Assembly: GCA_033442325.1 (NCBI GenBank)
Contig: JAWQFM010000016.1
Location: 254,097-318,096, forward strand
Direction of reading: 5' to 3'
Origin: Salpingoeca rosetta
Lineage: Eukaryota > Protista > Choanoflagellata
Length of the DNA: 64,000 bases
In this document: in pieces, positions 8,905 to 13,997 of the stretch
Numbering within the stretch: position 1 is the stretch's first letter
Layout: each line of letters begins with the position of its first letter
The notes under the pieces: generated by a model
Told to the model about the DNA's origin: nothing
Databases searched by the model: none
What the model saw: only the letters and a program-made list of their open reading frames with translations
Translations under genes and position numbers: made by a program

Positions 8905-9181
8905 TCAGCGAAACCTGCTTTGCACTGCCACAAACAGCTGCTTGGCAACCTCGCGCCCCTGTTCTTCCCAATGCCGCCGCCCTTGCTCATACTCAGCAGA
9001 CCCTGAGACGCACGCAAGAGGTTGATGAGGGGGGGGGGGGATGTGTGAGGGAGAGGTGGGTTTGCTCTTTCTTGGTTGCAGAGCAATGCAGAGCCTCCAA
9101 ACAGCACAGATGCACACAGCCACACATGCACAGGGAACAGACAAGTTGCACACATCCCACAGAAAGACACGCAGGCACGCA

Positions 9182-9238
<57 letters not shown>

Positions 9239-10656
9239 GCAGGGTGGACAATGTCTTTGCCTGTGAGGTTGGCGCCCATGCCAACGGAAAACGCGCCTGC
9301 ATCCCACCACTGATGCGCGTTATCAGGTGAACAGCCACCAGAGGGCGCAATGTTCATCTGGCGCAGCGGAGACACGCTGAGCATCGACCTGAGCGAGGCA
9401 CGCAAGATGTCACATGCCATGGTGTGCCAGCGTTGTGAGTCACTCAAAACAACACAGTGTGCGGCACCACCACAACAATCCTGACACCGCAGTCGCAACC
9501 ACACCATTTGCAACCGCACTCAACCGTCAACAAACTTGAGGATTCTTGGGCCAAGCATGCTGGCATGGAAGAGTTTGATGACGCGCGCCCCGCGGCGGTG
9601 CATATCCCACAGCTCATTCGACGTCATCCCTACAGTGAGACGTGCGTGCGCGTGCGTGTGCGTGTGCGTGTGCGTGTGCGCGTGCGTGTGTCTTGTGAGT
9701 GTGCGCGTCACACATGTGTTTGAGGAACACTCGCGTGTGAGTGTACACGTGCACTTGTGGAATTAGCTTGTCTTCATGTGCACATGTTGTGCGTCTCGTG
9801 CGCGCGGACATGTGTGTACCTGCGGGAACAGCGAGGACGCCGTGCTTGTGACATTCGTCAATGAAACCTTTTGGCTCAATTGGCGACAGTGCAAACGCAG
9901 CACCTGTTGCAAAAAGTTGCGTGAGAGGAACGTGACACATCCCAAGTAGCATTGAGAGGTAACGGCACACGAGAGAATGGGTCGCAAGATGGTAGCGATG
10001 CATGCGCGTTGTACACATCGTAACACCAACAACGCAAACACACACACACACACACACCTAGGGCAGCAATGTCCTTGATGATGGGCACATCCACATCCAT
10101 AACTGTGCCGACGCCGACACACACGTGCGATGGCACCTTCGCTGCAAGCTCAGCCAGCACACGGCGCCAATTAACCTGCGCACGCGCAGCAACAACAGCG
10201 TATGGACACACAGCAAGGAGGGGGTAAAGTGAGGTTGGGATGGCACAACACACAACACACAAACACAACGCCACATGGACCACGTGGGGCACGTGCGTGT
10301 TTCAGCGCGTACGGTGTCGAGGGTGACTTCGATGGCCCTGCAGCCCATGTCACACAGCTCCAAGCCCCGCGCAATGGCTGGTGGCCACAAGAACCAAGCA
10401 TGAGGGAACGCGTGCACACACGTGAGTTGGGACAACAGCACGCGAAACACACTCTCATCGTGTGCATGCGTTTCGTGCATCTGTGTTTGTGTTTGTGTGC
10501 GTGCGTGTGTGTGTTGTGGCGGGCCAAGGTTGGGCGCACCTGCATCTGGGTTCTTTGCGCGCAGAATGGCGATGACGCCTGCTCGCCGCAACTTGGCCAT
10601 GGTCGCGTCAAGGCGCCTGAATTCGACACACAACACACACACACACACATGTTCGA

Positions 10657-10703
<47 letters not shown>

Positions 10704-10704
10704 G

Positions 10705-10743
<39 letters not shown>

Positions 10744-11128
10744 ACATTTACACACAACGCATGCATACAAAACCGTGGCCCTGGTGAGTGCAAGGATGAT
10801 AGAGCGGTCGCGTGCAAGAATGGCAAAACAAGACATTCGTGGTCGCACGTTTCCACGTCGTTTGTAGATGTGTCGAGTGTCTCGATGTTGAGTGGTTTGC
10901 CCTTCGACTGCGCTTCTACAGACGACAGCTGCGCCCGTGTCACCTGCGAGTGGTCGCCTTGTGTCTCCTGACACATGGCTGAGCGTGAGTGAACATGAGT
11001 GCATGAGAGCGAGCGAAAAATGAGTGAGTGGATTGAAGTTGACAAGGCGGTGATCATCACGCGTCCACAAGACCCTGCCTACGCGATGACAGCCATGTCA
11101 ACAACGAAAACCGCAGGTATTCACTACA

Positions 11129-11182
<54 letters not shown>

Positions 11183-11320
11183 GACACGACACGACACGAC
11201 CCAAACTCATTAGCAACCGCTATGGGTAGTTTAAACCTGGTGGCTGCCATGTACCGTCGGAGCAGCCTCACAGTCCGTGGGACGGTACATTACCATGGGT
11301 GATATCCCAATGACCGACAA

Positions 11321-11368
<48 letters not shown>

Positions 11369-11729
11369 GCACGCACGCACGCACGCATGCACGCACGCGC
11401 GCACACACACACACACAATCACACACGCACACACCAGCCAGGATGTCTGCATGTCTGGCTGCGGCTGTGAGGGATGGCGAATTGTCGTGGCCGTGAAGCG
11501 AAAACCTGAGGCGTTGGTGGTGACGCAGGCACATTGCCACGCACAGAGCCGTGTGAATGAGGCACGGCGGTTGCACATTCGCACAGACACACACACACAC
11601 ACACACAGACACAGACACAGACACAGACACACAGACACACACACAGAGACACAGACACAGACACACAATACAACACACACACACACACATACAACCCAAC
11701 ACACACGGACACATACACACACACCCGAC

Positions 11730-11782
<53 letters not shown>

Positions 11783-12711
11783 CACACACACATGACCGCA
11801 TTGCCCACCAGTCCAGCATGCCTGCTGCCCAGGCACTGCCGCCGCCACATTCGTCCTTTGGGCGATGGTACACGGGCGTGACAAGCGTGTTGTGCACACC
11901 AGCGTCACTCGCAATCACTGCACGCATGCATGTTGGCAAGCAGCGGAGCCAGCGTGAGGTTGGCACGATGACACGATACTAGGATGACATCACACGAAAA
12001 ACATCATTGCATGCTGGGCAAGCACGTTGCGAACATGTTTGTGTGCACAAGTGCACGCGACATGGGGCGGCTTCCCTCCATTGCCGCTCACCTGACCACC
12101 GTTTCTGGAGCCCAGTCTCGTCACGCGTCTTGAAGCACACGGCAAGGCGACGCACACACACGTGGTGCTGGAAAGCACGCATCAGTGCACCCCACGCTGC
12201 ATCCTCGTATGGCGTGTCGGCGGCAGGAACGTGAGAGCGCAGCACCTGCACGTGTACGTGTGTGCGTGATGTGTGATACGTGATGCACGTTGGCATGTGT
12301 GAGTGTGTGTTTGTGTTTATGCGTGTGTGATGTGTGATGGTGGTGTGTAAGTGCCAATCACGCGTGCCGTGAAAAGAACAGAATCAGGACCTTCGGTTTC
12401 AAATCAGCATCACAAGCTGGCGACTATACCGGAAGCTCCTGGTCAACAATCTCCAGCAGTGACGCGACGGAGAGGATGAGCAACTCCACGTGCTGCAAGT
12501 GGGGAACCATGATGGACCACAGCTTCGACAGAGTGCCTAGATGAATGATGACACACAGGTGTTGGTGGGGAGATGAGATATGGTATGACGACACCGAACA
12601 GCAACACTGCACTGGTACGGATGTGCTCTGACCACCTCTCACTGTCACACCCACTGTCTCTGGTCGTCGCTCACTCTTACATGAACACACACACACACAC
12701 ACACGCACGCA

Positions 12712-12782
<71 letters not shown>

Positions 12783-13317
12783 TCACACGCACACACACAC
12801 ACTCACTCACTCACATACGCACACACACACACACGCGCACGCACACACACACACTCACACACGCACACACACACACTCACACACACACACACACACTCTC
12901 TCTCTCTCGCTCTCTCGCGCGCGCAGAGGCAGAACGAAAGGGGGCACCGAGTTGTTTGCGGTGGTTGAAATCGATGCTGATTGGAATCCTGCGCTTGATG
13001 GCCGTCATCATCGCACGTGTCCACGAGTTGTACGACTATAAACAGCGACATACAGACCACAAGAAGACAGTCAACGTGAACACGCAGGAGCAGTCAGTAT
13101 CATGCACAACAACAGCGTGCAAACAACATGGTAGCATGCTATGAACGCACGTTCTCGGAGATCATTGGCGTGATGCCCGTCATGTGCAGCCACTTCTTGT
13201 CTGACCCTCCCAAGATCTGAAGCAGGGTGCGGTGCGCCTGTGAGTATGCATATGACAACGCAAACGCAGGCTTGGGCAGAAAACGTCGTGTTGACATTCA
13301 CAGCACACACAGGGCAT

Positions 13318-13360
<43 letters not shown>

Positions 13361-13997
13361 TGCATGACATGCACACCCACCCACCCACACCCACCCACAC
13401 ACAACATCCTACATCGCAAACCTTGTCCCAGTCAAGCTGGCTCGGGTCGTGGAGCGCAAACGCAGAGTGCTGGCGCTGGTAGTGCACCCGCTTCAGCTCT
13501 GGCAGGACAGTGAAGGTACCGACATCGGCACCGGGGATGCGCAGCACAAACTGCTGGTCGACCCCAGCCAAGTCACCGCTGCGGTACACCAGGTCGCCCA
13601 GCGGCCCCGTGGGCAACACTGACACCCACTGCGGCGCGGGTGTGCTCTGCTCGCGCTCCCCTTCCTGTTCGTCGGCTCTCAGGCGCGCAAGCGCAACACA
13701 CACGTTCAGCTCATCTCCTCCAATGGAACGCAGCATAACCTGTGCATTGGGGCTGTGCGAGCATCCCCCCGGCACAAGTGGGTGTAATCATGGCGCAAGT
13801 GTGAGAGACACGTTGAAGGCTGTGTTTGTGATTGCTGGCTGGCACAAGAACTCACCTCAGCCACCCCCACCGCCACCGCCAATGCCATGAGGTGTCATAC
13901 ACCAACCAGTGAGCCAGCATACTCACTCCTCAGGTGCTTGATCCACTGCCATTGGCGCATACCGCACCATGGCTTCTCCAAATGCGACCACCCGCAT
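8905..13997 (-). CDS. Fusion of PfkB-family 2-keto-3-deoxygluconate-kinase-like domain and KDPG/KHG aldolase (Eda/KdgA); 16 exons, ~604 aa
   Basis: Exons 13997-13927, 13752-13422, 13216-13151, 13035-12948, 12536-12430, 12245-12092, 11917-11809, 11505-11435, 10978-10849, 10616-10540, 10377-10313, 10175-10058, 9903-9820, 9629-9536, 9388-9237, 9002-8905. All GT-AG and phase compatible, total 1815 nt. Kinase motifs [48 protein letters not shown]. Aldolase motifs VIAILR, IEVTL, GVGTV, IKLF, PSGG, VGMG. Confidence 0.88.

What the first reader, a model, noticed from the sequence alone, without database searches (positions are those of the whole stretch)
8905..13997. Single-gene KdgK-Eda fusion: lower Entner-Doudoroff / uronate route in one intron-rich eukaryotic polypeptide
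Seen: the kinase has no stop; its last exon (..TNDVE AC|gtgcga, phase 2) joins ttcag|G CGC CTT into the aldolase, and all 15 introns are phase-consistent. Known: kdgK and kdgA/eda are consecutive steps (KDG to KDPG to pyruvate + G3P) and usually adjacent separate genes in bacterial alginate, pectin and uronate catabolism. Inference: an old bacterial operon-derived fusion, now fully intronised, letting a bacterivore use sugar acids from prey or algal polysaccharides.
Basis: partly seen in the sequence, partly recalled or inferred. Interest (0 to 1): 0.75.

Follow-up and report, generated by a model that had tools for sequence, protein, structure and literature searches.

The report
Fused sugar-acid kinase–aldolase gene, choanoflagellate
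A 16-exon gene in what is almost certainly Salpingoeca rosetta encodes one 604-residue protein that joins a KDG-kinase-like half to a KDPG-type aldolase half. The fusion is real and made as one mRNA, but it is already in public databases and common among protists and sponges. Its unusual feature is that the kinase's normal catalytic aspartate is a serine.

Summary
On the minus strand, 16 exons and 15 GT-AG introns give one open frame. After one donor correction (intron 7 begins after 11809), the product is identical to the public protein PTSG_12407 of Salpingoeca rosetta (604 aa).

Stranded RNA-seq shows the fusion splice 10849/10616. Two independent transcript contigs of about 1.9 kb span both halves.

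The fusion is not unique. At least 86 database proteins share the same kinase-to-aldolase order. They come from choanoflagellates, homoscleromorph sponges, dinoflagellates, haptophytes, an amoebozoan and a prasinophyte. All carry automatic names only, and I found no paper on them.

The nearest prokaryotic relatives of both halves are adjacent kinase and aldolase genes in Marine Group II archaea. They lie in the same order, next to a galactonate dehydratase. This supports an operon-like origin, but an archaeal-type one with the direction of transfer unresolved.

The kinase half is closest to KDG kinases. However, the whole clade has Ser in place of the GXGD aspartate and an Asp after the di-glycine motif (91 of 91 against 24 of 24). 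Kinase activity is therefore plausible but unproven. The bacterivory explanation is not supported.

The parts
13998..14076 (-). 5' UTR (approximate 5' end)
   Evidence: The transcript contig of run X6 reaches 14076. There is no ATG upstream of 13997 in this stretch.
13927..13997 (-). Exon 1 (start codon at 13997-13995; first strand of the kinase fold)
   Evidence: Intron 1 joint 13752/13927 was seen in 34+8 reads.
13422..13752 (-). Exon 2. Kinase di-glycine motif with Asp37 (codon 13715-13713).
   Evidence: Pfam PfkB hit on this exon alone. It was the query of the representative search. Joints.
13151..13216 (-). Exon 3
   Evidence: Joints 13216/13422 and 13035/13151.
12948..13035 (-). Exon 4 (conserved D-x-N-H-R substrate-site motif, residues 178-182)
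12430..12536 (-). Exon 5 (region aligned to the NXXE motif; not conserved in this family)
   Evidence: Joints 12535/12947 and 12243/12428. Alignments.
12092..12245 (-). Exon 6
   Evidence: Joint 11917/12092.
11809..11917 (-). Exon 7. The GXGD-equivalent motif reads G-G-G-S; Ser300 codon at 11837-11835. The donor was corrected to lie after 11809.
   Evidence: Contig pieces 11807-11917 with 2 ambiguous letters, plus record arithmetic. Identity to P0143. Alignment to 2afb and 1v19.
11435..11505 (-). Exon 8
   Evidence: Length confirmed by contig arithmetic and by identity to P0143.
10849..10978 (-). Exon 9. Conserved C-terminal end of the kinase domain plus the first part of the linker; ends in phase 2.
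   Evidence: Loose ends at 10848 match the start of exon 10 in 9+4 reads. The motif is conserved across the family.
10540..10616 (-). Exon 10. End of the linker and first helix and strand of the aldolase. The internal ATG (Met382) is at 10600-10598.
   Evidence: Joint 10377/10540 was seen in 35+8 reads.
10313..10377 (-). Exon 11. Aldolase general-base Glu418 (codon 10330-10328).
10058..10175 (-). Exon 12
   Evidence: Joint 10173/10311. The loose end at 9905 matches the end of exon 12.
9820..9903 (-). Exon 13
   Evidence: The loose end at 9819 matches the start of exon 14.
9536..9629 (-). Exon 14. Schiff-base Lys509 (codon 9576-9574).
   Evidence: Joint 9386/9534. The lysine is invariant in 53 sequences.
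9237..9388 (-). Exon 15 (phosphate-binding loops of the aldolase)
   Evidence: Pfam PF01081 hit on this exon alone. It is the only PF01081 site in the genome.
8905..9002 (-). Exon 16 with the TGA stop (8907-8905)
   Evidence: contig pieces 8830-9005.
8830..8904 (-). 3' UTR and poly(A) site (~8830)
   Evidence: T-run loose ends at 8830 in both raw-read runs.

Best explanation
The locus is one spliced gene, PTSG_12407 of Salpingoeca rosetta. It is transcribed as one polyadenylated mRNA and translated into a 604-aa two-domain enzyme. Residues 1 to about 352 form a PfkB-fold domain of the KDG-kinase type. A structured linker (about 353-378) follows. Residues about 379-604 form a class I KDPG/KDPGal-type aldolase with its Schiff-base lysine (K509) and general-base glutamate (E418) intact.

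The most likely function is the last two steps of a semi-phosphorylative sugar-acid route. A 2-keto-3-deoxy-hexonate (KDG or its galacto epimer KDGal) is phosphorylated at C6, then cleaved to pyruvate and glyceraldehyde 3-phosphate. Fusion keeps the two active sites together.

What is shown: the gene structure, the single transcript, the two folds, the aldolase catalytic residues, the family's distribution, and the archaeal gene pair.

What is inferred: the substrate, and that the kinase half still transfers phosphate although the GXGD aspartate is a serine. My proposal is that Asp37, which in this clade alone follows the di-glycine motif, has taken over the role of the carboxylate.
For: Gene and transcript. 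The splice model is identical to P0143.

Kinase identity:
- The nearest solved sequences are KDG kinases, T. maritima 2afb (3e-20) and T. thermophilus 1v19.
- The predicted structure (pLDDT 95.2) has KDG kinases as its top Foldseek matches, with TM up to 0.87 normalised to the target.
- The best NCBIfam matches are the kinase half of NF041633 and the haloarchaeal KDG/KDGal kinase.

Aldolase identity:
- PF01081 scores 68.4 bits against a cut-off of 27.8.
- The nearest solved sequences are T. maritima KDPG aldolase and E. coli DgoA.
- E418 and K509 are invariant in 53 sequences.

Functional coupling of the two halves:
- The same fusion appears in at least 86 proteins.
- A second, independent fusion joins a related kinase to a different, canonical Eda-type aldolase in Diacronema.
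- Triple fusions add an aldo-keto reductase. Known eukaryotic DEH-to-KDG reductases belong to that superfamily (PMC8778563).
- Marine Group II archaea carry kinase, aldolase and galactonate dehydratase side by side in the same order.
- In Sycon the two are separate neighbouring genes.

Upstream supply: the genome encodes UxuA-type mannonate dehydratase, which makes KDG, at two loci.

Selection: the kinase half is under strong constraint, with 31 invariant columns across 53 sequences.
Against: - The GXGD aspartate is replaced by Ser300 in the whole clade. In Pfk-2 the equivalent D256N change lowers kcat 15,000-fold (PMC6429617).
- The region aligned to NXXE is not conserved.
- The S. rosetta protein scores below Pfam's PfkB cut-off (20.6 against 25.8 bits) and far below every NCBIfam equivalog cut-off.
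- No enzyme of this clade has been assayed, as far as my searches show.
- UxaC is absent, and I found no clear orthologue of the archaeal galactonate dehydratase. The source of the substrate is therefore open.
Confidence: 0.6

Rival explanations
1. The kinase-like half no longer transfers phosphate. It would be a pseudoenzyme kept as a substrate-binding, regulatory or oligomerising module. The protein would then act only as an aldolase, on a substrate phosphorylated elsewhere or not phosphorylated at all.
For: Ser replaces the GXGD aspartate in every member of the clade. The NXXE region is degenerate. Mutating this aspartate nearly abolishes catalysis in Pfk-2. Some species keep a second paralogue that retains the aspartate: Sycon P0094 and Yihiella P0070.
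Against: S. rosetta has no second kinase of this family and no other PF01081 gene. The kinase half is as conserved as the aldolase half, including the substrate-site motifs and the anion-hole glycines. The Ser always comes with a new Asp beside the substrate pocket. Ribokinase-fold kinases without this aspartate are known, for example ThiD and ThiM with Cys (from my own knowledge, not tested here). The aldolase keeps its phosphate-binding loops, so it needs a phosphorylated substrate.
Confidence: 0.25
2. The enzyme pair works on another 2-keto-3-deoxy acid or a related compound, not on KDG from uronates or alginate. Candidates are KDGal from galactonate (DeLey-Doudoroff route) or a substrate not yet described. 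The D37/S300 swap would then reflect a change of substrate rather than a relocated base.
For: The archaeal sister cluster carries a galactonate dehydratase that reaches the equivalog cut-off (311.2 against 311 bits). The best NCBIfam aldolase match is the KDPGal aldolase subfamily, 106.5 bits against 98.9 for eda. DgoA is among the closest solved relatives. The haloarchaeal kinase hit is a bifunctional KDG/KDGal enzyme.
Against: All these scores are far below the family cut-offs, so stereospecificity cannot be read from them. The genome has UxuA, which makes KDG, but no clear galactonate dehydratase. The AKR triple fusions fit the DEH-to-KDG route.
Confidence: 0.3
3. There are two separate genes or transcripts, and the aldolase is translated from its own mRNA starting at Met382 (10600). 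The apparent fusion would be a read-through or an assembly artefact.
For: An in-frame ATG lies just before the first aldolase strand. In Sycon the two halves are separate genes. An assembled contig alone does not prove a single molecule.
Against: Thirteen raw reads cross the 10849/10616 splice in frame. Read depth is even over both halves, and no cluster of read starts lies near 10600-10980. Without that splice, exon 9 would read into a long low-complexity tail. The same junction region is conserved in dozens of species, including transcriptome-derived complete ORFs. The linker is predicted to be structured, with pLDDT about 80.
Confidence: 0.03

Closest known systems
KDG kinases of the PfkB family with solved structures (T. 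maritima TM0067, 2afb; T. thermophilus, 1v19/1v1b; S. solfataricus, 2v78)
   Same: Same fold: TM 0.83-0.87 normalised to the target. Best sequence match is 3e-20. They share the di-glycine motif, the D-x-N-x-R substrate motif, the anion-hole glycines, the W-S strand of TM0067 and the C-terminal G-D-H motif.
   Different: About 21-24% identity. The GXGD Asp is Ser. Ala after the di-glycine is Asp. The NXXE region is not conserved. It is fused to an aldolase and is eukaryotic with introns.
KDPG/KDPGal aldolases (T. maritima 1wa3/1vlw; E. coli DgoA 2v81; E. coli Eda 1eua)
   Same: PF01081 above the cut-off. The Schiff-base Lys, general-base Glu and phosphate-binding loops are kept.
   Different: It is the C-terminal domain of a fusion. 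His replaces Pro after K-L-F. Asp sits at the position of Eda Arg49, where T. maritima has Thr and DgoA has Asn. It has a long C-terminal helix (575-602).
NCBIfam NF041633, bacterial 'KHG/KDPG aldolase/sugar kinase fusion protein'
   Same: The same two enzyme families are in one polypeptide. Its kinase half is the best NCBIfam match of this protein (132.8 bits).
   Different: The domain order is reversed, with the aldolase first. The score is far below the 700-bit cut-off. It is therefore an independent fusion, not the same family.
Marine Group II archaeal gene cluster: kinase, aldolase, galactonate dehydratase (L005, L009-L013)
   Same: These are the nearest prokaryotic relatives of both halves: 35% identity over the full kinase and 37% over the full aldolase. 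The gene order is the same, with 39 nt between the genes. The aldolases are sister to the fusion aldolases with support 99.
   Different: They are two separate genes. The kinase keeps the catalytic Asp (G-G-G-D) and has Ala after the di-glycine.
Diacronema-type fusion (P0025, P0110)
   Same: A kinase of the same wider family is fused in the same order to a PF01081 aldolase.
   Different: The kinase keeps the Asp. The aldolase is a different, canonical Eda-like lineage (158 bits in Pfam) that falls outside the clade in the aldolase tree. This is a second, independent fusion.

Membership tests
PfkB carbohydrate kinase family (PF00294) | Profile match above Pfam's gathering score | tested here: inconclusive
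   P0143 scores 20.6 bits against a cut-off of 25.8. Orthologues pass, for example P0002 at 39.4 and P0201 at 56.9 bits. The fold match to PfkB kinases is unambiguous.
PfkB carbohydrate kinase family (PF00294) | N-terminal di-glycine motif | tested here: met
   G35-G36 are invariant or nearly so in 53 sequences and align to the G-G of 2afb and 1v19.
PfkB carbohydrate kinase family (PF00294) | GXGD motif with the catalytic aspartate | tested here: not met
   The motif reads G-G-G-S (Ser300). HMMER aligns it to G-A-G-D of 2afb and 1v19. Ser is invariant in the clade.
PfkB carbohydrate kinase family (PF00294) | NXXE motif (Mg/phosphate site) | tested here: not met
   The aligned stretch reads S-V-A-S in S. 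rosetta and varies across the family.
2-dehydro-3-deoxygluconokinase (KdgK, EC 2.7.1.45) | NCBIfam equivalog score, or measured activity on KDG | tested here: not met
   NF041332 scores 66.7 bits against 440. NF040938 scores 30.5 against 400. NF052444 was seen only in orthologues, at 31 against 400. Activity is not testable with these tools.
KDPG/KHG aldolase family (PF01081) | Profile match above the gathering score | tested here: met
   68.4 bits against 27.8 over residues 383-570.
KDPG/KHG aldolase family (PF01081) | Schiff-base lysine and general-base glutamate | tested here: met
   K509 and E418 are invariant in 53 sequences and align to the catalytic residues of T. maritima KDPG aldolase derivatives.
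KDPG/KHG aldolase family (PF01081) | Substrate stereospecificity (KDPG, KDPGal or KHG) | not testable with these tools
   The KDPGal subfamily (106.5 bits) and eda (98.9 bits) score alike, and both are below their cut-offs.
NF041633 bacterial aldolase/kinase fusion | Full-length match above 700 bits with the aldolase N-terminal and the kinase C-terminal | tested here: not met
   132.8 bits. Only the kinase half aligns (model positions 243-568), and the domain order is reversed.

The most novel reading that the evidence does not exclude
The clade that includes this gene may have moved its catalytic carboxylate. On one branch of the kinase tree, the GXGD aspartate became serine and the alanine after the di-glycine motif became aspartate (D37). 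Both changes were then frozen in more than 90 sequences from choanoflagellates, sponges, dinoflagellates, haptophytes and an amoebozoan. If D37 now acts as the base, this would be a natural case of catalytic-residue migration in the ribokinase superfamily, inside a fused two-step enzyme. If the pair instead adapts the site to a new substrate or reaction, that would also be new. A further untested point: a dimer-forming kinase fused to a trimer-forming aldolase could build large assemblies.
Probability: 0.35. Interest if true: 0.7.

Novelty: new variant of a known kind. Interest (0 to 1): 0.5.

Why it matters
The fusion itself is ordinary as a principle, since consecutive enzymes often fuse and a reverse-order bacterial fusion is already curated. 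Three things give it some value.

1. It marks a sugar-acid catabolic module that choanoflagellates share with sponges. My searches found it in no animals other than sponges, but I did not search for it there directly. It therefore bears on what the metabolism of the first animals included.
2. Both halves point to a kinase-aldolase gene pair of Marine Group II archaea. This is an unusual partner for gene exchange with marine eukaryotes.
3. The kinase half breaks the most conserved catalytic rule of its superfamily, in a conserved and apparently compensated way. A handful of point mutants and a coupled assay can test this directly.

Tried and rejected
- **Pfam on single exons:** this gave only two weak hits. 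The default genome scan for PF01081 found nothing until the threshold was relaxed.
- I translated it only inside scripts, to check the frame and to compare it with the database protein P0143. After that I used P0143 by its id.
- it held short typed boundary strings. I redid the step by coordinates.
- **First splice model:** it had the wrong donor for intron 7 (11797). RNA evidence corrected it.
- **Two-gene model:** rejected.
- **Bacterial contaminant:** rejected, because the gene has 15 spliced introns, a poly(A) tail and a eukaryotic family.
- **Prokaryotes with the clade's own motifs:** none among 185,579 species.
- **Literature:** six full-text searches, including one on four locus tags, found no paper on the eukaryotic fusion.
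- **Pathway genes in this genome:** UxaC is absent. The archaeal galactonate dehydratase has only a 27-bit exon match, to a gene that looks like rhamnonate dehydratase. The second MR_MLE hit is plain enolase.
- **Rfam over the locus:** nothing near any gathering score.
- **Intron mapping of the Prymnesium gene:** my simple script failed.
- **Distance between D37 and S300 in the predicted model:** not measurable, because the tool returns no coordinates.
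Full report
**What is in the sequence.** The feature lies on the minus strand. Reading 14200-8700 in reverse complement and translating the three frames gives sixteen coding pieces. They join through fifteen GT..AG introns into one open frame from the ATG at 13997 to the TGA ending at 8905. Exon 9 ends in phase 2 at 10849, followed by a GT donor, and exon 10 starts at 10616 after an AG. Without this splice, exon 9 would run on into a long low-complexity tail. The introns are 115-456 nt long and full of (GT)n and similar microsatellites.

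**RNA evidence.** A run search found stranded raw RNA-seq of the same species label, plus assembled runs holding about a third of the stretch's words, which is the exonic share. I laid two raw runs and two contig runs from other studies on window:8600-14300.
- The RNA comes from the minus strand.
- Nine introns appear as CT..AC joints: introns 1-6, 10, 11 and 14.
- The other introns border repeats that the tool skipped. Introns 9, 12 and 13 still show up as loose ends whose letters are the reverse complement of the start or end of the next exon.
- At the fusion junction (10848) this is 9 reads in one run and 4 in the other.
- One contig in each of the two other studies (1925 and 1983 nt) runs from the poly(A) site near 8830 to 13752 or beyond, and to 14076.
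- Record arithmetic shows that exons 8 to 15 occupy exactly the 791 nt of the model.
- Exon 7 is 12 nt shorter than in my first model. The true donor lies after 11809.
- Read depth is similar over the two halves. No pile of read starts is listed near the internal ATG (10600-10598).

**Identity of the gene.** The joined step was left out. Exon 2 alone gave a weak PfkB hit and exon 15 a weak KDPG/KHG-aldolase hit.

I searched exon 2 with HMMER against 1.84 billion representatives. It found only 130 relatives, many of them 540-740 aa long. All ten long ones that I tested carry PfkB followed by PF01081. A word search with one of them (Choanoeca flexa, P0002) returned P0143, 'hypothetical protein PTSG_12407 [Salpingoeca rosetta]', 604 aa. 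The RNA-corrected splice model is identical to it residue for residue. The genome size of 55.4 Mb fits that species. The gene model is therefore already public, under an automatic name. From that point I used P0143 by its id.

**The two halves.**

*Kinase half.*
- It is closest to solved KDG kinases by sequence: T. maritima 2afb at 3e-20, then T. thermophilus 1v19.
- It is also closest to them by predicted fold. The model has mean pLDDT 95.2. Its top Foldseek matches are 2afb, 3ktn, 4gm6, 1v19 and 2v78, with TM up to 0.87 normalised to the target.
- The best NCBIfam matches are the kinase half of the bacterial reverse-order fusion NF041633 and a haloarchaeal KDG/KDGal kinase. All are far below their cut-offs.

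*Aldolase half.*
- It passes Pfam's threshold: 68.4 bits against 27.8.
- It is nearest to T. maritima KDPG aldolase and E. coli DgoA.
- It keeps the Schiff-base lysine (K509), the general-base glutamate (E418) and the phosphate-binding loops. K509 and E418 are invariant in 53 sequences.

The linker (about 353-378) is predicted with pLDDT near 80 and is partly helical. It is not a floppy tether. This is the only PF01081 gene and the only kinase of this family in the genome.

**Distribution.** The same kinase-to-aldolase fusion occurs in:
- at least eleven choanoflagellates;
- the homoscleromorph sponges Oscarella lobularis, O. pearsei and Corticium candelabrum;
- the dinoflagellates Effrenium, Polarella, Yihiella and Abedinium (the Symbiodinium model, P0183, is shorter and carries only the aldolase Pfam domain);
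- the haptophyte Prymnesium;
- the amoebozoan Cavostelium;
- the prasinophyte Cymbomonas, where it is annotated as two consecutive models;
- many unnamed marine sequences.

Among the proteins fetched, 86 have the Ser-type kinase motif followed by the aldolase lysine motif. Some add an aldo-keto reductase at the C-terminus (P0201, P0078, P0203). A review states that the known eukaryotic reductases that turn alginate-derived DEH into KDG belong to that superfamily (PMC8778563). These triple fusions therefore fit a reductase, kinase, aldolase sequence.

In the calcareous sponge Sycon ciliatum the two halves are separate. They are intronless, divergently oriented genes 6 kb apart. Six full-text searches, including one on four locus tags, found no paper on this eukaryotic family.

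**Origin.** A scan of one genome for each of 185,579 prokaryotic species found no relative carrying the clade's own motifs. The word search did bring up 332-334 aa stand-alone proteins that are 35% identical over the full length and keep the aspartate. On a marine metagenome contig this kinase is followed after 39 nt by a 207-aa aldolase, then by a dehydratase. A Pelota gene lies just upstream of the kinase.
- That aldolase is 37% identical to the S. rosetta aldolase half over its whole length.
- The dehydratase reaches NCBI's equivalog cut-off for galactonate dehydratase.
- Named genomes with this kinase are Marine Group II archaea: UBA602, UBA501 and Thalassarchaeaceae.

I built quick maximum-likelihood trees (IQ-TREE, LG+G4, SH-aLRT support only).

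*Kinase tree (73 rows).*
- The Ser-type sequences form one clade (support 98).
- Inside it, choanoflagellates plus sponges form a clade (98), with sponges sister to choanoflagellates.
- The archaeal clade and two Asp-type eukaryotic groups sit at an unresolved base.

*Aldolase tree (33 rows).*
- The fusion aldolases form one clade (98), with the archaeal aldolases as sister (99).
- The Asp-type fusions of Diacronema and P0110 carry a different, canonical Eda-like aldolase. Fusion therefore happened at least twice.
- Long branches meet near that root, so this tree should be read with care.

Two of the 15 S. rosetta intron positions coincide in column and phase with introns of the Oscarella lobularis gene. 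My own rough estimate is that about 0.17 coincidences would be expected by chance.

Taken together, this supports an operon-like origin and vertical descent within choanoflagellates plus animals. The partner is archaeal rather than bacterial, and the direction of transfer is open.

**The odd active site.** HMMER aligns G-G-G-S of this family to G-A-G-D of both solved KDG kinases. Ser300 is invariant across the clade. A paper on E. coli Pfk-2 reports that mutating the equivalent aspartate (D256N) lowers kcat 15,000-fold without changing KM (PMC6429617). The stretch aligned to the NXXE motif is also not conserved.

Two facts argue against plain decay. First, the kinase half is strongly conserved. 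Second, there is a strict pairing.
- All 91 Ser-type sequences with a recognisable first motif have Asp right after the di-glycine (G-G-D-E).
- All 24 Asp-type relatives and outgroups have Ala or Ser there.

Because the Ser type is one clade, this pairing counts as one evolutionary event, not 91. The position after the di-glycine holds the lysine proposed to stabilise the transition state in LacC and ribokinase (PMC6429617). From memory of the T. thermophilus KDG kinase work, the preceding glycine (Gly34) contacts KDG in the same pocket as Asp251. The numbering is consistent with that. A relocated carboxylate is therefore plausible, but I could not measure distances in the model.

**Function.** The best reading is a bifunctional enzyme for the last two steps of a semi-phosphorylative sugar-acid route, from KDG or KDGal to pyruvate plus glyceraldehyde 3-phosphate. 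The kinase chemistry is unproven.

A possible source of KDG exists: UxuA-type mannonate dehydratase at two loci. UxaC is absent. No clear orthologue of the archaeal galactonate dehydratase was found. The protein starts directly with the first strand of the kinase fold, so I see no room for an N-terminal targeting peptide; this is an inference.

The evidence does not support this, because the family is equally present in phototrophs and sponges.

**Verdict.** As a fusion it is neither new nor rare, being already annotated and widespread. It is uncharacterised, and its conserved Asp/Ser swap and archaeal sister genes make it a moderately interesting variant of a known kind.

Noticed in passing
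window 14113-15800, + strand: A divergently transcribed neighbour starts about 40-70 nt from this gene's 5' end; read orientation flips at about 14139. Its open frames look like a SAM-like segment followed by two CUE-like segments. It is more highly expressed than the fusion gene.
   Followed up: partly
window 11200-11320 (inside intron 8): A stretch of about 120 nt of non-repeat sequence sits between two (GT)n tracts and contains a 10-bp inverted repeat. It is single-copy in the genome, has no Rfam match and shows no RNA-seq depth. It remains unexplained.
   Followed up: partly
window 11740-11795 and many introns of the gene: Most of the 15 introns carry (GT)n, (GTCT)n or (GCGT)n microsatellites, often right at the donor. 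This made the read tool skip six junctions.
   Followed up: no
L021:3084-3791 (-) and L021:10001-11089 (+), Sycon ciliatum: In this calcareous sponge the kinase and aldolase are separate, intronless, divergently oriented genes 6 kb apart. The kinase gene is present at two places in the assembly (L021, L022). Sycon also has an Asp-type paralogue (P0094).
   Followed up: partly
P0144 (Monosiga brevicollis MONBRDRAFT_28906, 970 aa): The public model joins a complete cysteine-synthase-like PALP domain (residues 26-297) to the kinase-aldolase fusion. This is either a merged gene model or a true triple fusion. I did not check it.
   Followed up: no
G000:C6:1712548-1713329 (L002/L004) and C24:734170-734922 (L003): There are two loci with UxuA-type mannonate dehydratase matches (116 and 60 bits). 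This enzyme is unusual for a holozoan and would supply KDG.
   Followed up: partly
L005:3127-7041 (marine metagenome contig; Marine Group II archaeon by similarity): A compact cluster holds Pelota, a KDG/KDGal-type kinase, an aldolase and a galactonate dehydratase. This suggests a DeLey-Doudoroff-like galactonate route in Marine Group II archaea.
   Followed up: partly
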